A stretch of DNA of 63,168 nt, filler included, from Antechinus flavipes (taxonomy: Eukaryota), in NCBI RefSeq assembly GCF_016432865.1. It is 3 parts of 3 records of this genome, joined end to end, with 100 filler letters (N's around TTAATTAATTAA, not from the genome) between each part and the next. Parts side by side here need not be neighbours in the genome. Positions count along the whole stretch, not along the records: positions 22,308 to 47,380 come from NC_067402.1; 2 more parts are not named here. The stretch is one strand, 5' to 3'. Shown here piece by piece: positions 26,100 through 36,774 of this stretch (position 1 is the first letter of the stretch; every line of letters starts with the position of its first letter). A program made the translations under genes and the position numbers. The notes beneath the pieces were generated by a model, which saw only the letters and a program-made list of their open reading frames with translations, did not search any database and was not told where the DNA came from.

Positions 26100-27130
26100 G
26101 CACCAAGCTGAAAGTAATGTCAGGAGAGAAGAGGAGCATATATGAAAGATGTTATAATGTTAAAATGACAGGTTTTGTTTTGGGGGGAATAAGAGAAAGT
26201 AAGGAGACAATAAACATCTATGTTTTGATTCTGTATGAGGAGTATGGTTGTACCAGCAATTGTAATAGGAAAGTTAAGAAGATAAGAATGTTCATGGGAA
26301 AAGCTAAGGAGTTCCCTTTTGGATGTAGTGAGTAGAAGGTGTCTATGGGACATTCAGATTGAAATACCCAATAGGCATTTGGAAATTGAAGATCGAGTTT
26401 GCTGGCTAAATATTCTTGAAAATCAAAAGTATAGATGAGAATTGAATCTGGGAGTTGATGAGATCCACAAATGAAATTGTGTAGAGGGAGAAGAGAAGAG
26501 GGAACTAGACAGAGTCTTAAGGGATATCTTTGGTAGGGTGGGAGAAAATTCAATAAAGGAGAGTGATAAAGAATTGCCATATAAGAAGAGAATCAAGACT
26601 ATTATCACAAAATCCTAAAGAGAGAAGAGGGTTACAGAGAAGTCAAGAAGGATAAGGATTGAGAGTTCATTAGATTTGATAGCAATTTCTATTGATAATG
26701 AAGTCAGATTCCTGATTATAAAGAATTATAGAATGACAAGAAAGGAAGTTGAAGCTATTATATTTGGCCAACTCAAACATTTCAGCCACAAGAGAGGAGA
26801 TAGAACAAATTAGAGGGAATAGATAGATCAAGTGAAGTTTTTAGCGGATGAGGCAGGCATAGGTATATGGATAAGCAATAGAAAAGTAGTCAGTAAATAA
26901 GAGGTAAGTGAAGATAAGTGAGATGGGGATGATAAAGAACATGCAATGTCTTAGAGTATATAGGATGCAATAGGACCATTTGTCTAATAAAGAGGCTTAC
27001 TTTGCCAAGAAAGGTCATCATTTCATCTGAGATGGATAAAGGAACAAACAGAAAGAAAAAACAAAAGGCACTGACAAGATAAGGAAGGAGAGGAAGCTCT
27101 TGGCAATTAGCCTTATTTTTTTTAGTAAAA
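26100..27130 (-). mobile_element. Ancient L2 LINE fragment
   Basis: Purine-rich antisense L2 body (gagggagaagagaagaggg...gtcaagaaggataaggattgag...gatcaagtgaag). Confidence 0.7.
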
Positions 27131-27144
27131 TATTAGGTACAAAC

Positions 27145-28260
27145 AAAACCAATGCAAACAACATTAGAAGGAAAGTAGGAAGCTAGGAAATATTTTTACA
27201 GTCTCTGATAAAGACCTCATTTCTCAAATATATAAGAAAGAGGTCACTCCTCAATTGAAAAAAATCACCAAAGGATAGGAATAGTCAATTTTGAAATAGA
27301 GAGATCAAAACTTCTTATAGTGATATAAAAATGACCTAAATCACTATTAATTAAAGAAATGCAAATGAAAACAACTCTGAGATATCACCTCACATCTATC
27401 ATGTTGGATAATATGATAGAAATGGAAAATGACAAATGTTGGAGGGAATGTAAGAAAATTGAAACAATATGCATTGTTGGTGGAATTGTGAACTGAGCCA
27501 ACCATTCTGGAGAGCAAATTAGAATTGTGACCCAACAGCTATAAAATTGAGCTTTTTTTTTTTTTGATTCAGCAAAAATCAAAGATCACATTTGAGTTTT
27601 ATCTGAAAGAGATCATAAAACATTTATAATTTTAATATATATATTTATAAATTTATATAAAAATATTTATAGCAGCTCTTTTTGTGGTGGCAAAGAATTG
27701 AAAATTGAGAGGATGCCCCTCAATTTGGGAATGCACAAGTTGTAGCATATGAATGTAATGGAATTATGCTACAATAAAATGATGAGCAGGCTATTTCAGG
27801 AAAACCTAGAAAGACAATTCAAACTGATGCAAAGTGAAGTAAGTAGATTGAGGAGAATGTTCTACACACTAATAGCAATATTATATTGTGTGAAGGACTT
27901 GGTTATTTTGATCAAGACAATGACTCTAGATAATTCCAAAGGCCTCGTGATGAAAAATGTTACCCACCTCCAAAGAAATAACTGGTGGAGTCTGAATGCA
28001 TATTAAAGCAAACTTATTTCTCATTTTCTTTATATTTTGTGTTTCTTTATTTTTAAGTCTGCATCTTCTTTCACAATCTGATGAATATGGAAATATGTTT
28101 TGCATGATTGTACATGTATAACCTATATCAAACTGCTTACTTTCTTAGGGAGGGGATACTTAATGGAGGAAGGGAGAAAATGTGGAACTCAGTTAAAAAA
28201 AGAATGTTAAAAATGTCTTTACATGTAATTGAGAAAAATAAAATATGAGTGAAGAAAAAC
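27145..28260 (+). mobile_element. Degenerate 5'-truncated L1 (ORF2 end plus 3'UTR)
   Basis: aagaaatgcaaatgaaaacaactctgagatatcacctcacatc and the downstream 3'UTR. Confidence 0.85.
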
Positions 28261-29899
28261 TAAAAATTTTTAAAAATATTTTACATATATTGGAAAAATC
28301 AAATGCTATTTAAAAAGAAAAAACAGAATATTCACAAAAATATAAACAAAATATGAAATATGAAACATTAGAGGACTGATGAGAAACTAAGAACCTTAAT
28401 AATGAAGATAGCATTTGATTGAAAATTAGTAAAGCTGGGTTTAATAGCTCTATCATTAATTGATTGTATGACCATGAGCAAATCATTTTACCATTCTGAC
28501 CTTGGAGTCAGGTTCTCTTAGCCACAATTTTGTCATGTGTATTCATGTAAACAATAAGGGAACATGAGGAACATAAAGGCAAAATAGAAAGAATAATGGA
28601 TTTGGAATCAATAGAAATTGGTTTTGTCACTGCTTACCTGTAAGACCTTGGACGATTCATTTAATTTTCTGGGCCCCAATTTTGTCATTTTTAAATTATG
28701 GAATTGGGATCATCCAGATCCCAAGTGTCCATTAATATCTATTTTAGTTTCAAATTATCTGGTTTCCTGCTCACTACTATTATTTAATCCTCATTCTTAT
28801 TCATGGGGTTCAAATAGAAATAGTCTCCCAAGTCATTATTTTATTATTTTAACATTTTATTTAATGTTTAATTTCAACTGACTATTTGAAAGGTGGATTA
28901 AAATAATTGCTTTTCCCATTTGAATAAAAATATTATGATAGAGGTTCACCTTCCATAAGCTCCTTGTAAACATCCTTTGTATAACTTCTATAGGAGACAA
29001 TAGGGATGACTTAGACTTCAGTCTGGATGTACATGATTTTGATGTACTGTGACTCTGTACTTGGAAAACTTTGTATTCCTTGTAGCTTTGGGTTTATGAG
29101 TTTTCAAAGTGGTGATATTTATTAGCAATATTTAAAAGTGCTTAAATTGAATCAATGTTATATTAAAATATTTAATATTAAAATATTAAAATATATATGA
29201 CCATAGCCTCTTCTAGGACAAATTGTCAGGTAAATTCTCTAGAATATTTTGAAACCAAATTTGGATTATGAGAATTTTTGTTTATAGAAGACAGAAGTGA
29301 ATTTCTAGCTTTCAGGTTGTATCTTTGCTAGATATTCAAGAGCAATATATTCTTTTTGTTAGTTTGTTTATTTTCAATTTTTAAAATATTTTCCAGTTTT
29401 TTTTTTTTATTATAGGTTTTTATTTACAAGATATATGCATAGGTGATATTTCAGCATTGACAGTTGCAAATCTTTTTGTTCCAATTTTTTCCCTCCTTCT
29501 CCCCAGTCTTTCCCCCAGATGGCAGGTTGACCAATACCATGTTTCCCCGATAATAAGACCTATCCCGAAAATAAGCCCTTCCTTTACTGTGTAAGATTCC
29601 TCTAAAATAAGCCCTCCCCCCAAAATAAGCCCTTTTGAGATTGCTGCTGTAGTGAAGGTGATCCCCTGCGCTACATGCTACATTACAGTACCCTCTATAT
29701 GCACCGTTTCCCCTCCTCCCCCCCCCCCTTCCCGGGTGAAACGCACGCCCCACTCCGAGCTGCATCCAATCAGAGCTGCAGCAGTGAGCACATCATTCTG
29801 TTCTTCCCCAGTGATTTGCTTGCTGGCGCCATTGAGAGCAGTGCCGTGGAGGAGAGCTGAGGCAGGACAACATAAAAACCCGGTATGTAAGCAGGAGTG

Positions 29900-30070
29900 A
29901 GGGGGCACCATGGAGGATAAAAGGGGCATGATGGAGGATAAAAGAAGAACTCAGGGGGCATGATGGAGGATAAAAGAAGAACTCAGGGGGCATCATGGAG
30001 GATAGAAGGAGCACTCAGGGAGCATGATGGGGTTAAAACATTATTGAGGGGCATGATGGAGTGAAAAGAA
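29900..30070. repeat. G-rich minisatellite inside the transposon
   Basis: About 6 copies of ggggcatgatggaggataaaag(aagaactcag). Confidence 0.85.
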
Positions 30071-30097
30071 GGACTGATGGTCATAATTTTATTATTC

Positions 30098-30781
30098 TGT
30101 CTGCACGGGTCACCGGTGTTTTGGCAATTCATTTGGATGGAAAGAAAGCCACACCTCTAATCATCAGTAAGGGCAAGAAAGATAAGATTGAACATGTATC
30201 AGGCATTTATGTTCTTGAAACCAAAAAAGCCTGGTGTACACAAGCTGTTATAAGAAAGTGGGTTGATTTAATGCTGCCACTTGTTATGCGAGGTAACCAA
30301 AGAGGTCTGATAATCTGGGATTCAGCCAGCACTCACCGTGCTAAAGAAATGAAGAACTTCCTTGCAGAGAGAAGAATAGATCAAGTAATTCCTGCAGGAA
30401 TGACTGCCTATCTCCAGACCCTTGATATTGCAATAAACAAGCCATTCAAGGACCATTTGCACATGGAAGTCAATTGACTACATTGAAAATAGAATGGAAA
30501 GAAATCAGCGTGGAAACTTTGTGAAGCCCTGTCTGCAAGAAGTCATAACTTGGGTGAAGAAATCATGGGATAAAATTACTGACAGCTGTGTCGCCAAGGC
30601 ACTACGAGCAGGTTACCTGGACAAGACATGTTCATTTAAAGAGAGCTATATTGCTGGACATGACAGATTGGGTCCACTTCTTCTGAAGGAAATAGAGGTG
30701 CAAGACATCCAGGATGGAATTCAGGGTATGGACATTTATGACAATGTTGTTGAAGAAGATGACATGATCATTATTGAATAA
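30098..30781 (+). pseudogene. C-terminal half of a pogo-family DDE_1 transposase, frameshifted
   Basis: LIIWDSASTH...IPAGMTAYLQTLDIAINKPFKD...ITWVKKSWDKI motifs; a 1-bp insertion at ~30475 joins ORFs 30061-30477 and 30494-30781; N-terminal DNA-binding domain and first catalytic Asp absent. Confidence 0.88.
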
Positions 30782-32936
30782 AGGTACTTTTTTTGTTCAC
30801 ATTTACCTGTTTATTAAAATTGCTGTCAATGTTCATTAAAATAAGCCCTCCCCTGAAAATAAGCCCTCTGGTGTTTTTTCTGTCCAAAAAAATAATAAGA
30901 CAGTATCTTATTATTGGGGAAACACGACACATGTTAAATATGTTAAAGTATAAGTTAAATACAATATATGTATACATGTCCAAACAGTTATTTTGCTGTA
31001 TAAAAAGAATTGGACTTTGAAATAGTGAACAATTAGCCTGTGAAGGAAATAAAAAATGCAAAAATAGACAAAAATAGAGAGATTGGGAATTCTATGTAGT
31101 GGTTCATAGTCATCTCCCAGAGTTCTTTCCCTGGGTGTAGCTGGTTCAGTTCATTAGTGCTCTATTGCAATTGATTTGGTCATTGTTGAAGAGGGCCACG
31201 TCCATCAGAATTGATTATCATATAGTATTATTGTTGAAGTATATAATGATCTTCTGGTCCTGCTCATTTCACTCAGCATCAGTTCATGTAAGTCTCTCCA
31301 GGCCTTTCTGAAATCATCCTGCTGGTCGTTTCTTATAGAACAATAATATTCCATAATATTCATATACCACAATTTATTCAGCCATTCTCCAATTGATGGG
31401 CATCCACTCAGTTTCCAGTTTCTGGCCACTACAAAGAGACCTGCCACAAACATACTTTCACATACAGGTCCCTTTCCCTTCTTTAAAATTCCTTTGGGAT
31501 ATAAACCCAGTAGTAACACTGCTGGATCAAAGGGTATGCACAGTTTGATAACTATTTTGAGCATAGTTCCAAATTGCTCTCTAGCATGGCTGGATATATT
31601 CACAATTCCACCAACAATGCATCAGTGTCCCAATTTCCCCACATCCTCTCCAACATTCAGCATTATCTTTTCCTGTCATCCTAGCCAATCTGACAGGTGT
31701 GTAGTGGTATCTCAGAGTTGTCTTAATTTGTATTTCTCTGATTAATAATGACTTGGAATATCTTTTCATATGGCTAGAAATAGTTTCAATTTCTTCGTCT
31801 GAGAATTGTCTATACATATCTTTTGACCATTTATCAATTGGAGAATGGCTTGATTTCTTATAAATTAGAATCAATTCTCTATATATTTTGGAAATGAGGC
31901 CTTTATCAGAACCTTTGACTATAAAAATGTTTTCCCAGTTTATTAAGAGGCAATATATTCTTACAGTCTACAAGTGACATACTGCCCAGTTCTTCTATTT
32001 AATTGCATAATGTACATTGGTCACTAGGTCTAACTTGGTTCCTTAAGGATAACTTTTCTTTAATTTCTGGTGTCAGGGACTTCAACTTGAATTGTTATAA
32101 TAATTATTTCTATTTCTGTAAACAAATGGACATAATAGACATTTATTCTATGCTGCTTTGTTCACATATTATTTATTGAGTTTATGGGGATGTCACTTAT
32201 TAAGGGCTTTTTGAATATATTCTTGGATTTTAGCTGTTCCATGGTCTCCATGCAAAAGTAGCTTGAATTCAGTTACATTCTAAAGATCTACCTATCATAG
32301 CAGATGATAAAATTTTGATTCAAGAAGATATGAGTTTGATTTTTGTCTCAGATACTTATTAGGTATATGACCATGAGTGACCATCTGGAAGTTACTTCTC
32401 TTTCTAGAATCTGGAGGTCCAGAGTTCTAGACTGTCTTTAATGGAGTTAGAAAGAAGATGATATTGGTGGTCTAAGCCACCTGATATGTGTTGTCTCCTG
32501 TTTCTCATTGAAGATGTCTTGCTGCTTTGACTAACTTGGTTTGATTGTCCGAGTAGAGGGAATTGGTTAATAACTAATGCTGGTAATAGCTGTGATGGCA
32601 GCTCTTTTTTCTGTTAAGTGTTGCTCTGCAAACCCTTGGAATAGATAAATATTAACTACTGTCACTATCACCAGAATCATCAACATCATTGTTGTCCTTG
32701 TCATCATCATTGTTATCACCATCACCATTGCACAAGAAAGTAATGCCAAATAGTTTCAAAAAGATTTCTGTAGATTTTTTTTACTTATTTATCATTTTTT
32801 GTAAGGATGCTTTTTTTGTGATGAAGTATTAATCTTTTTTGTTACCTTCAGGAACAATTTTTAACCTGAGGTCTGTGAAAATTTTGTTTAATATAAAAAT
32901 CTTTTTTATAATTATGTAAATAAAATTCATTTTTGT

Positions 32937-34699: not shown

Positions 34700-35300
34700 G
34701 GATAGGGAGACATTCACAACTTAAGAGCTATAACATCCTAGATAGAGGCTATATATGAAGTAAGAATTGAAGGTTTTGAGGAGGATGTTAGGAGGGGTAC
34801 ATCTTAGACACAATGGATAATCAAGGGAAAGAAACAGAGACAGATCAACTTAGCTGTGGAGTGCAAAAAAGGAAGCAATGTATAATAATGGTAGAAAATG
34901 TAGATTGGCTCCAGGCTATAAAGGGCTTTAAATAACAGCAAATTTTGTATTTGGTATTAGAGGTAATTGGGAAACATTAGAATTTATTGAATTAGAATAA
35001 CATGGTCAAATCTACACTTTCAGAAAATTATTTTGTGGATGATGGATTGTAGAGGGAAGAGATTTGAGGCAGGAAAACAATTAAGGGTGTATCATAAGAA
35101 GCCTGTCAGTACTTAATGAGTGAATGACTTAAGTTGGTTAATGTGAGTAAAGAAAGGAATGGATGTTAGAAATGTCAAACTAGAATCAACAAAATTTGGT
35201 TTCTTCTTGACATATGAGATGGGAAAGGATGAGGTTTGCAGATGACTTTGAAATTGTAAAGTGAAGTGACTAGAAGGTATACTGATAGTCTTAATAAAAA
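34700..35300 (-). mobile_element. Ancient L2 LINE fragment
   Basis: Antisense L2 body (ataacatggtcaaatctacactttcag...gatttgaggcagg). Confidence 0.6.
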
Positions 35301-36412: not shown

Positions 36413-36774
36413 ATTTTATTTTTTTTTTTGCTGAGGCAATAGGGGTTAAGAACTGAAAAGTGTATTTGTCATTGAAATGCTTTTTTTATATATGGTATCT
36501 TTCTAGGAAGAAATAAACTAATGAGTGAATGACGTAAGTTGGTTAATGTGAGTAAAGAAAGGAATGGATGTTAGAAATGTCAAATTAGAATCAACAAAAT
36601 TTGGTTTCTTCTTGACATATGAGATGGGGAAGGATAAGGTTTGCAGATGACTTTGTTATAACAATAACTAGGGTCACACAACTAGGCAGTATTAAGTGTC
36701 TGAGGTCATATTTGAACTCAGTCCTCCTGACTTCAGGGCTGGTGCTCTATCTGCTGTGCTATCTAGCTGCCCCC
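36413..36774 (-). mobile_element. WSINE1-like SINE split by a ~210-bp locally templated insertion
   Basis: SINE parts at 36413-36450 and ~36665-36774 flank copies of 37235-37301 (inverted) and 35114-35250 (direct). Confidence 0.88.

What the first reader, a model, noticed from the sequence alone, without database searches (positions are those of the whole stretch)
29537..30927. pogo/Tc2-like DNA transposon inserted inside a comparatively young marsupial L1
Seen: complete TIRs and a TA site interrupt the 3'UTR of an L1 whose ORF2 still has 100-130-codon open stretches, so the DNA transposon was mobile after that L1 family. The transposase remnant has one frameshift and otherwise reads open. 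Established: most mammalian DNA transposons are ancient, and late activity in bats and marsupials (e.g. hAT SPIN/OC1) is attributed to horizontal transfer. Inference: a late, possibly horizontally acquired pogo invasion. Whether this family is already catalogued is unknown to me.
Basis: partly seen in the sequence, partly recalled or inferred. Interest (0 to 1): 0.7.

Follow-up and report, generated by a model that had tools for sequence, protein, structure and literature searches.

The report
Young Passer (pogo) transposon in marsupial L1
This is a crippled copy of a Passer-family (pogo/Tc2-type) cut-and-paste DNA transposon that jumped into the tail of a marsupial L1 element fairly recently; its closest relatives sit in sugar glider, bats, a galago, lizards, frogs and parasites, which fits horizontal spread but does not prove it.

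Summary
Positions 29537-30927 are a 1391-bp element with 23-nt terminal inverted repeats. It sits at a TA target (left copy TA, right copy now CA) in the 3'UTR of a 5'-truncated, minus-strand marsupial-type L1. More than 100 contigs per run, from three coded organisms, join the two flanks without the element, so the flanks are one continuous L1.

The element is a non-autonomous internal-deletion copy of a Passer (PS, "TC2") transposon of the pogo superfamily. It keeps only the C-terminal 227 of 432 transposase codons, with one +1 frameshift, one 3-bp loss and no stop. The DNA-binding domain and the first catalytic Asp are gone.

The TIR matches published PasserB TIRs from a planarian (21/23) and a leech. 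Intact relatives are DD35D. An intact 432-aa transposase is 94% identical to the remnant. A 98% identical copy is annotated in the sugar glider, fused to a SCAN domain.

The copy differs from the family majority at about 2-3% of sites, so "late" is supported.

Horizontal origin is likely but unproven. The host range is patchy and the tree disagrees with host phylogeny (lizard with galago, vesper bat with Xenopus). I could run no dS test and no orthologous empty-site test.

Two published Passer surveys list no marsupial. Repbase and Dfam could not be checked.

The parts
29535..29536 (.). Left copy of the target-site duplication (TA)
   Evidence: Empty L1 copies read CCAA-TA-CATGTT (joints). TA flanks 111 of 138 TIRs of the same type in metagenome loci.
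29537..29559 (+). 5' terminal inverted repeat, CCATGTTTCCCCGATAATAAGAC. The ancestral start was CCGTG; the CpG has decayed to CA.
   Evidence: It matches the published Schmidtea PasserB1 TIR at 21/23. Apart from the CpG change it is identical to the commonest metagenome variant.
29568..29633 (+). Three subterminal copies of AAAATAAGCCCT (29568, 29604, 29622). They are inferred transposase-binding repeats.
   Evidence: 5 exact copies in the window, all within about 100 bp of the element ends; 0.38 expected by chance. The same motif lies beside the TIR in the Schmidtea element and in L005.
29634..30099 (+). Non-coding internal region (equivalent to the 5'UTR, plus the deletion junction). It contains a 32-bp tandem array x3.7 at 29923-30038.
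   Evidence: No transposase similarity upstream of 30100. Region 29537-29939 is multicopy in all four runs, while the array region is rare in organism B. A loose end in run X2 before 30102 reads the upstream codons IPTTGYES, which match the IYIPTTGYES stretch of P0268. This marks the deletion breakpoint.
30100..30474 (+). Transposase remnant, part 1. It corresponds to residues 206-331 of the intact 432-aa P0268 and carries the 2nd and 3rd catalytic Asp. One codon (Met) has been lost after 30387.
   Evidence: Pfam DDE_1, E 1.4e-11. 119/126 identical to P0268. Part of the family has ATG put in behind 30387 (table 4).
30474..30476 (+). +1 frameshift between Asn331 and Asp332 of the reference frame
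   Evidence: About a quarter of the depth in organisms I and J, and about half in A, lacks one base at 30474 (table 4).
30476..30781 (+). Transposase remnant, part 2. It corresponds to residues 332-432 of P0268, followed by the natural stop.
   Evidence: 95/101 identical to P0268 and ends at the same C-terminal residues.
30838..30867 (+). Two further AAAATAAGCCCT copies near the 3' end, in direct (not inverted) orientation relative to the left ones
30905..30927 (-). 3' terminal inverted repeat (reverse complement TCGTGTTTCCCCAATAATAAGAT)
30928..30929 (.). Right copy of the target-site duplication, now CA (TA with a T-to-C change)
   Evidence: Comparison with the empty-site joints. CA and TG are the commonest non-TA flanks.
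29398..29536 (-). Distal part of the host L1 3'UTR, up to its poly(A) (a T run on the + strand)
   Evidence: Very high multicopy depth in organisms I, J and A. Loose ends before 29397 are T-rich.
30930..31207 (-). Proximal part of the host L1 3'UTR
   Evidence: multicopy in I, J and A; contigs join it directly to 29535.
31208..31967 (-). C-terminal ~250 codons of L1 ORF2 in two open stretches (128 and 138 codons). The L1 is 5'-truncated beyond this point.

Best explanation
Positions 29537-30927 are one copy of a non-autonomous, internally deleted member of a Passer (PS; "TC2") family of the pogo superfamily of IS630/Tc1/mariner cut-and-paste transposons.

Shown here:
- It has short TIRs that begin CCGTG (decayed to CCATG and TCGTG).
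- It has subterminal AAAATAAGCCCT repeats.
- It has a TA target duplication.
- It keeps the C-terminal 227 codons of a 432-codon HTH_Tnp_Tc5 + DDE_1 (DD35D) transposase.
- It has lost the first 205 codons, which hold the DNA-binding domain and the first catalytic Asp, and it carries a frameshift. It therefore cannot encode an active enzyme.

Inferred:
- It was mobilised in trans by a full-length partner like the intact 432-aa ORF P0268 or its sugar-glider copy. That enzyme would bind the TIR and subterminal repeats, excise the element and integrate it at a TA.
- It landed in the 3'UTR of a 5'-truncated L1 of a marsupial. The insertion is therefore younger than that L1 copy. With about 2-3% divergence from the family majority it is roughly 10 million years old, as an order of magnitude only.
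- The deletion form, including the frameshift, is itself an amplified subfamily with thousands of copy-equivalents in at least three coded organisms.

Origin (inferred, about 0.65): this Passer lineage entered marsupials by horizontal transfer, as it seems to have entered bats, a galago, squamates and frogs.
For: Structure and boundaries.

Empty sites and TA: with joints in 100 or more contigs per run in organisms I, J and A.

Protein family: DDE_1. The remnant is 94% identical to intact P0268 over 227 aa. P0268 and P0353 have HTH_Tnp_Tc5 + DDE_1. I counted DD35D by hand in P0268 and in the L005 ORF.

TIR: it matches the published PasserB TIRs of Schmidtea and Helobdella. TA flanks 111 of 138 TIRs of the same type in metagenome loci.

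Youth: 28 or more private differences in 1391 bp, mostly C>T and G>A decay; 13 amino-acid differences plus one lost residue in 227 against P0268; P0268 and the Petaurus copy are 98% alike and unbroken.

Lineage restriction of the host L1: the flanks are absent at 85% likeness or more in organism B, which still holds the element and its own MITE-like deletion forms.

Horizontal-transfer signal:
- Relatives at 72-82% amino-acid identity occur in Rhinolophus, Zootoca, Otolemur, Pipistrellus, Xenopus, Ranitomeya and Crotalus, and more distant ones (about 50-75%) in Helobdella, Trichuris, Stegodyphus, Galendromus and Enteropsectra.
- The quick tree conflicts with host phylogeny: Zootoca+Otolemur 98*, Pipistrellus+Xenopus 96*.
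- Two Passer surveys list no marsupial.
- Dupeyron et al. already note the patchy TC2 host range.
Against: - No DNA of other marsupial copies could be fetched, so the age rests on a truncated table of differences and on protein identity.
- Organisms are coded, so I cannot say which marsupials carry the family or whether organism B is a marsupial at all.
- Contigs were about 100 bp, so the orthologous site in relatives could not be read.
- The marsupial clade sits on a stem of 0.16 changes per site. Its nearest sampled relative is only 82% identical, so no donor is in hand.
- Both trees are quick trees (SH-aLRT only) and many inner forks are unresolved.
- The surveys that lack marsupials may simply predate the relevant assemblies.
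Confidence: 0.85

Rival explanations
1. Vertical persistence. The Passer lineage has lived in marsupials since before their radiation, or since early therians, and stayed active in some lines. The copy is young but no horizontal transfer into marsupials occurred.
For: The family is multicopy in at least four coded organisms, one of which lacks the host L1 family. This could mean it predates their split. The marsupial clade has a fairly long private stem of 0.16 and no close donor. 82% amino-acid identity to a bat copy is within the range of conserved host proteins.
Against: [quoted passage not shown] No marsupial appears in two Passer surveys. Within the clade, hosts are mixed without regard to phylogeny. 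Copies are only a few percent diverged.
Confidence: 0.25
2. It is a Tigger or other non-Passer pogo element, such as an ancient mammalian Tigger or Kanga-like fossil.
For: Pfam DDE_1 is shared by all pogo families.
Against: The TIR begins CCGTG and matches PasserB TIRs. Full-length relatives are DD35D with HTH_Tnp_Tc5 and no CENP-B_N. Named relatives are called "pogo transposable element with KRAB", that is POGK-like, which Gao et al. derive from Passer. Divergence is a few percent, not the 20-30% of ancient mammalian Tiggers (one search gives 21-28% for TIGGER1).
Confidence: 0.02
3. It is not a mobile-element insertion but a chance inverted repeat, an assembly chimera, or a fragment of a host (domesticated) pogo-derived gene.
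For: None beyond the fact that POGK and POGZ are Passer-derived host genes.
Against: The TIR core is expected 0 times by chance. Hundreds of L1 copies lack exactly this segment. The segment is itself multicopy in four runs. It is frameshifted and lacks its N-terminal half.
Confidence: 0.01

Closest known systems
Passer (PS) family, pogo superfamily, clade "PasserB/B1" (Scme-PasserB1 of Schmidtea mediterranea; Hero-PasserB of Helobdella robusta). Sources: Gao et al. 2020, PMC7386202; Wang et al. 2023, PMC9976928.
   Same: The TIR is CCGTGTTTCCCCGA(A/T)AATAAGAC (21/23 to Schmidtea). AAAATAAGCCCT repeats lie beside the TIR. The target duplication is TA. The partner transposase is about 431-437 aa, HTH_Tnp_Tc5 + DDE_1, DD35D.
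   Different: The host is a marsupial, which neither survey lists. This copy is a 1.39-kb deletion derivative without the N-terminal 205 codons. At the protein level the closest sampled relatives are vertebrate copies (Rhinolophus 82%, Zootoca 79%, Otolemur 79%), not the planarian or leech ones. The published bat, lizard and afrotherian elements are PasserC, with CCGTA-type TIRs.
"TC2-like" pogo clade 39 of Dupeyron et al. 2020 (PMC7325037)
   Same: The host list is the same as in my searches: Helobdella, snake, gecko or lizard, a lemur-like primate, a mite and Stegodyphus. The authors raise the same question of ancient origin with losses versus repeated horizontal transfer.
   Different: No marsupial was reported there. 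I did not place the window sequence in their tree.
SPIN and OC1 hAT transposons, horizontally transferred into opossum, galago, vesper bats, tenrec, squamates and Xenopus (Pace 2008 and Novick 2010, as summarised in PMC5857283)
   Same: Young DNA transposons in a marsupial. The recipient set overlaps strikingly (galago, bats, squamates, frogs, marsupial), and relatives occur in parasites. Non-autonomous deletion derivatives have amplified.
   Different: They belong to a different superfamily: hAT, with an 8-bp TSD and a DDE/RNase-H hAT transposase. Here the element is pogo/Passer with a TA TSD.
POGK and other host-transposase fusion genes
   Same: POGK is KRAB + Passer transposase. The sugar-glider gene model XP_068919392.1 is SCAN + an unbroken transposase of this very family.
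   Different: The window copy is a dead non-autonomous element, not a gene. Whether the Petaurus model is a real fusion transcript or an annotation artefact was not tested.

Membership tests
Passer (PS) family of pogo | Catalytic triad DD35D (35 residues between the 2nd and 3rd Asp) | tested here: met
   I counted 35 by hand in intact P0268 (94% identical to the remnant) and in the L005 ORF. The window copy itself has 34 because one Met codon was lost; part of the family has ATG put in behind 30387.
Passer (PS) family of pogo | Short TIRs (<30 bp) that begin CCGTG or CCGTA | tested here: met
   The TIR is 23 nt. The left arm begins CCATG and the right arm TCGTG, both one transition from CCGTG. 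It matches the Schmidtea PasserB1 TIR at 21/23. 109 metagenome copies carry CCGTGTTTCCCCGATAATAAG.
Passer (PS) family of pogo | TA target-site duplication | tested here: met
   The left copy is TA and the right is CA. Empty L1 copies have a single TA at that point. TA flanks 111 of 138 related TIRs.
Passer (PS) family of pogo | DNA-binding domain HTH_Tnp_Tc5, with or without BrkDBD; no CENP-B_N | tested here: met
   This cannot be tested on the window copy because that region is deleted. P0268, P0353 and P0260 have HTH_Tnp_Tc5 + DDE_1 only. P0120 has a faint BrkDBD match.
Passer (PS) family of pogo | [quoted passage not shown] | tested here: inconclusive
   The reference sequences of the other families were not available by reference. 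The window groups at 99* with relatives that include Helobdella copies (a published PasserB host) and proteins named POGK-like. No non-Passer outgroup was included.
Autonomous (transposase-competent) element | Complete, uninterrupted transposase ORF with DNA-binding domain and all three catalytic residues | tested here: not met
   Residues 1-205 are absent. There is a +1 frameshift at about 30474 and a 1-codon deletion.
Tigger family of pogo | CENP-B_N + HTH_Tnp_Tc5 DNA-binding domain, and Tigger-type TIRs | tested here: not met
   No CENP-B_N in the full-length relatives. The TIR is of the CCGTG type.
   The TSD is 2 bp (TA) and the transposase is DDE_1 pogo-type. The resemblance lies only in evolutionary behaviour.

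The most novel reading that the evidence does not exclude
A Passer/TC2 transposon lineage invaded Australasian marsupials (the sugar-glider line and relatives) by horizontal transfer within roughly the last 10-20 million years. It amplified to thousands of copies, mostly as deletion derivatives. It may still be transposition-competent, because unbroken 432-codon ORFs 98% alike survive. It has also begun to be captured as a SCAN-transposase fusion gene. That would make it one of very few naturally active cut-and-paste transposons in a non-bat mammal, and a marsupial counterpart of the SPIN/OC1 invasions, with overlapping recipients (galago, bats, squamates, frogs) and parasite carriers (whipworm, leech, microsporidian).
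Probability: 0.3. Interest if true: 0.7.

Novelty: new member of a known kind. Interest (0 to 1): 0.5.

Why it matters
Recent DNA-transposon activity is rare in mammals outside bats. The documented transfers into marsupials that I found in the library are hAT elements in the opossum (SPIN, OC1, OposCharlie2) and BovB retrotransposons in marsupials generally.

A young Passer family in a marsupial would have three consequences if confirmed:
- It would add a second DNA-transposon superfamily to that short list.
- It would extend the known mammalian range of Passer, published so far as monotremes, afrotherians, a few rodents, one shrew, bats and cetartiodactyls.
- It would give a dated, nested insertion (inside a lineage-specific L1) that can calibrate the time of invasion.

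The unbroken transposase in the sugar glider, and its SCAN-fused gene model, make two questions directly testable: whether a marsupial carries an active cut-and-paste element, and whether a host-transposase fusion is being born.

If the family is already in Dfam or Repbase, this window adds only a well-resolved example.

Tried and rejected
So I could not fetch DNA for P0268, the Petaurus copy or any other relative. That ruled out DNA-level identity, a TIR check of the intact partner, and dS.
- A scan of viral contigs with the TIR pattern gave 0 hits, so there is no lead to a viral vector.
- An Rfam scan of the piece gave 0 hits.
- A PDB sequence search with the intact transposase gave 0 hits.
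- Pfam gave nothing for the L1 C-terminal pieces. I used the PDB ORF2p match instead.
- Gentles et al. 2007, the opossum TE catalogue, is not held. No paper in the library links Passer, TC2 or TcMar-Tc2 to a young marsupial family.
- The "careful" tree did not finish in time. Both trees reported are quick trees.
- Sequencing-run organisms are coded, so host species and carriers cannot be named. The Logan contigs are about 100 bp, so no contig spans from unique flank into the element and the orthologous site in relatives could not be read.
- An "AC" target duplication (element 29538-30926) was considered. I rejected it because it needs two extra bases in the empty site that the majority of L1 copies do not have, and because relatives use TA.
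For the trees the remnant was read through with X at the frameshift.
Full report
**1. What is in the sequence**

Positions 29537-30927 carry an inverted repeat at their ends.
- The 19-nt core TGTTTCCCCGATAATAAGA occurs twice in the whole window, at 29540-29558 (+) and at 30906-30924 (-, one mismatch). None is expected by chance.
- Read out to the ends, the arms are 23 nt. The left arm is CCATGTTTCCCCGATAATAAGAC. The reverse complement of the right arm is TCGTGTTTCCCCAATAATAAGAT. They agree at 19/23 and all differences are transitions.
- Five exact copies of AAAATAAGCCCT lie within about 100 bp of the two ends, all on the + strand. Only 0.38 are expected by chance.
- Inside the element there is a 32-bp tandem array (29923-30038).
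- Two adjacent reading frames (30100-30474 and 30476-30778) together encode the C-terminal part of a DDE_1 transposase (Pfam PF03184, E 1.4e-11).

**2. The host element and the target site**

The L1 is on the minus strand, which the finding did not specify.
- Two open stretches of 128 and 138 codons (31967-31584 and 31621-31208) carry the L1 ORF2 C-terminus.
- The second stretch matches residues 1164-1265 of the 1275-residue human LINE-1 ORF2p (8sxt_A, E 8e-23).
- The only named relatives in the protein word search are Tasmanian-devil proteins, at about 70%. So "marsupial-type L1" is supported, but the species is not identified.
- The L1 is 5'-truncated just above 31967.

I laid Logan contigs of four public runs on 29300-31200 (the organisms are coded I, J, A and B).
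- Positions 29364-29536 and 30928-31200 are enormously multicopy in I, J and A, and absent in B.
- In each of I, J and A, more than 100 contigs join about 29535 directly to about 30929, skipping 1393-1397 bases.
- Loose ends before 29397 are T-rich, which is the L1 poly(A) tail.

So the two flanks are one continuous L1 3'UTR. The empty site reads CCAA-TA-CATGTT. The filled site reads CCAA-TA-[29537..30927]-CA-CATGTT. This is a TA duplication whose right copy has suffered a T-to-C change.

**3. Which family**

The word search with the 138-aa piece gave 65-76% identical fragments from Crotalus horridus, Pipistrellus kuhlii, Helobdella robusta, Galendromus, Stegodyphus, Hemicordylus, Micrurus and a microsporidian.

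The exhaustive search added full-length relatives of about 430 aa. These have HTH_Tnp_Tc5 + DDE_1 and no CENP-B_N.

Two papers define the Passer (PS) family of pogo. The defining features are DD35D, short TIRs that start CCGTG or CCGTA, a TA target duplication, and transposases of 400-500 aa.

Their supplementary tables give the TIR of Schmidtea mediterranea PasserB1 as CCGTGTTTCCCCGAAAATAAGAC, followed by AAAATAAGCCCT motifs. They give the TIR of Helobdella PasserB as CCGTGTTTCCTCATATATAAGACA. The window TIR matches the planarian one at 21/23 and shares the subterminal motif.

A scan of JGI metagenome contigs with the TIR pattern returned more than 120 loci.
- Most are 318-610-bp MITEs.
- The commonest variant, CCGTGTTTCCCCGATAATAAG, is identical to the window TIR apart from its CpG decay.
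- 111 of 138 TIR matches are flanked by TA.
- One locus, L005, carries an intact 431-aa DD35D ORF behind the same 5' end.

**4. The autonomous partner**

A profile built from the window pieces and their relatives (A2) found P0268, an unbroken 432-aa protein from a Logan contig.
- It is 94% identical to the remnant over all 227 retained residues and ends at the same C-terminus.
- Its 90% cluster contains XP_068919392.1 of Petaurus breviceps papuanus, the sugar glider. This protein is 626 aa: a SCAN domain followed by the entire transposase, 98% identical to P0268 and without a break.
- P0268 is DD35D by my own count of the residues.

The window copy corresponds to residues 206-432 only.
- No trace of residues 1-205 exists in the element. 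Those residues hold the DNA-binding domain and the DET motif with the first catalytic Asp.
- There is a +1 frameshift between residues 331 and 332, and the Met codon of DQVMIPAG is missing.
- The contig data show that part of the family has that ATG. About a quarter of the depth in I and J, and about half in A, lacks the extra base (table 4). So both lesions, and the large deletion, belong to an amplified non-autonomous subfamily, not to this copy alone.
- A loose end in organism B reads the upstream codons IPTTGYES, which match the IYIPTTGYES stretch of P0268. This places the deletion breakpoint at about 30100.

**5. Mechanism**

Shown:
- the anatomy of a cut-and-paste pogo element;
- a TA duplication;
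- an empty donor-type site in sister L1 copies;
- the existence of an intact cognate transposase.

Inferred from what is known of Passer (transposition demonstrated for fish copies, PMC9976928) and of the Tc1/mariner/pogo group:
- The 1.39-kb derivative kept both TIRs and the subterminal repeats.
- It was therefore mobilised in trans by the full-length element's DD35D enzyme and integrated at a TA in the L1 3'UTR.

**6. Age**

The insertion must postdate the L1 copy. The evidence for its age is as follows.
- That L1 family is shared at 85% or more by organisms I, J and A but not by B.
- At least 28 positions of the 1391 differ from what nearly all contigs of all four runs show. Most of them have T or A in the window where the family has C or G (table 3). 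The table is cut, so 2% is a minimum.
- Independently, 13 amino-acid changes in 227 codons against P0268 imply about 2.5% DNA divergence under neutral decay. This is my own arithmetic.
- The L1 flanks show 10 or more such differences in about 446 bp.

At typical mammalian neutral rates this is of the order of 10 million years, with wide error. That is far younger than the ancient mammalian DNA transposons. For comparison, TIGGER1 is 21-28% diverged.

The 98% identity between two unbroken ORFs suggests even more recent activity in the sugar-glider line.

If the unique-flank depth of 27-40 is taken as single copy, the interior of the element corresponds to thousands of copy-equivalents. The tool warns that this is not a copy number.

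**7. Horizontal or vertical?**

For transfer:
- Full-length relatives are scattered: Rhinolophus 82%, Zootoca 79%, Otolemur 79%, Hyla 76%, Ranitomeya 75%, Pipistrellus 75%, Xenopus 74%, Crotalus 72%, Trichuris suis 63%, and further off Stegodyphus, Helobdella, Galendromus and Enteropsectra.
- The tree ignores host relationships. Zootoca pairs with Otolemur (98*), Pipistrellus pairs with Xenopus (96*), and the inner branches are very short.
- The remnant is about as close to a snake (76%), a bat (74-75%) and a leech (72%) as those are to each other.
- No marsupial is listed in either Passer survey.
- DNA transposons are reported to evolve neutrally within genomes between transfers.

Against, or missing:
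- The marsupial clade has a private stem of 0.16, and no donor closer than 82% is in hand.
- I could not run dS tests or empty-site tests across marsupials.
- The organisms are coded.
- The trees are quick trees.

I put horizontal entry into marsupials at about 0.65 and long vertical persistence at about 0.25.

**8. Novelty**

The kind is known: Passer/TC2, with its patchy distribution and a horizontal-transfer-prone behaviour like that of SPIN and OC1. A young marsupial member is not in the papers I could search. It is annotated only as an "uncharacterized protein" in the sugar glider. It may nevertheless be in Dfam or Repbase, which I could not query. Hence my rating of "new member of a known kind" and a moderate interest score.

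**9. Limits and conduct**

The remnant was read through with X at the break for the trees.

Noticed in passing
P0353 (XP_068919392.1, Petaurus breviceps papuanus) and P0379 (XP_012664069.2, Otolemur garnettii): Gene models fuse a SCAN domain to a complete transposase of this Passer lineage. The sugar-glider model has residues 48-136 as SCAN and 195-626 as an unbroken transposase. The galago model is named "myeloid zinc finger 1 isoform X2"; its cluster representative P0271 carries SCAN plus the transposase domains, and P0379 itself was not scanned. Other relatives are fused in gene models to KRAB/zf-C2H2 (Ranitomeya), DnaJ (Pipistrellus), R3H (Rhinolophus) and a 7tm_3 receptor (Dendropsophus). 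These are either recurrent exon capture of the transposase, as in POGK, or annotation artefacts.
   Followed up: partly
Loci L001-L120 (JGI metagenome contigs Ga0210059_*, JGI24158J21664_*, JGI24159J19872_*, JGI24021J15306_*, JGI24022J15233_*): An unidentified eukaryote in these metagenomes, with contigs up to 68 kb, is full of 318-610-bp MITEs. They carry exactly the ancestral form of the window's TIR (CCGTGTTTCCCCGATAATAAG) and TA duplications. L005 (Ga0058703_1019014) holds a full-length 431-aa copy. The host organism was not identified.
   Followed up: partly
Protein hits P0297 (Trichuris suis), P0007/P0018/P0312 (Helobdella robusta), P0013/P0349/P0351 (Enteropsectra breve): Relatives of the marsupial element occur in a pig whipworm, a leech and a microsporidian. 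These are parasites or blood-feeders of the kind proposed as vectors for SPIN/OC1 transfers. No vector claim was tested. The viral-contig scan was empty.
   Followed up: no
window 29568-29633 and 30838-30867: The subterminal AAAATAAGCCCT repeats are in the same (direct) orientation at both ends of the element, whereas the TIRs proper are inverted. In the metagenome MITEs (L002, L007) the corresponding motif beside the left TIR is in the opposite orientation.
   Followed up: partly
window 29923-30038: A 32-bp tandem array (x3.7, 89% matches) lies inside the non-coding part of the element. It is well represented in organisms I, J and A but nearly absent in organism B, so it appears to be a subfamily-specific expansion.
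   Followed up: partly
window 27224-27846 (+), within about 22308-28000: A second, older L1 lies on the + strand, tail-to-tail with the host L1. Its ORF2 C-terminal region is only 67% identical, in inverted orientation, to 31869-31260. Its open stretches are shorter, at 71-90 codons.
   Followed up: partly
window 35114-35250 and 36519-36655; 36446-36517 and 37305-37235: Two short repeats are 97% identical: a direct one of 137 bp and an inverted one of 72 bp. They suggest a recent local duplication or two copies of a young short repeat. They were not classified.
   Followed up: no
run X16 (organism J) against X15 (organism I), window 29300-29427: The low-copy left flank is matched with 0 differences by a 1210-bp contig of X16, and with 2 differences plus 6 gap positions by a 1202-bp contig of X15. 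Organism J is probably the window's own species, and organism I a close relative or a different individual.
   Followed up: no
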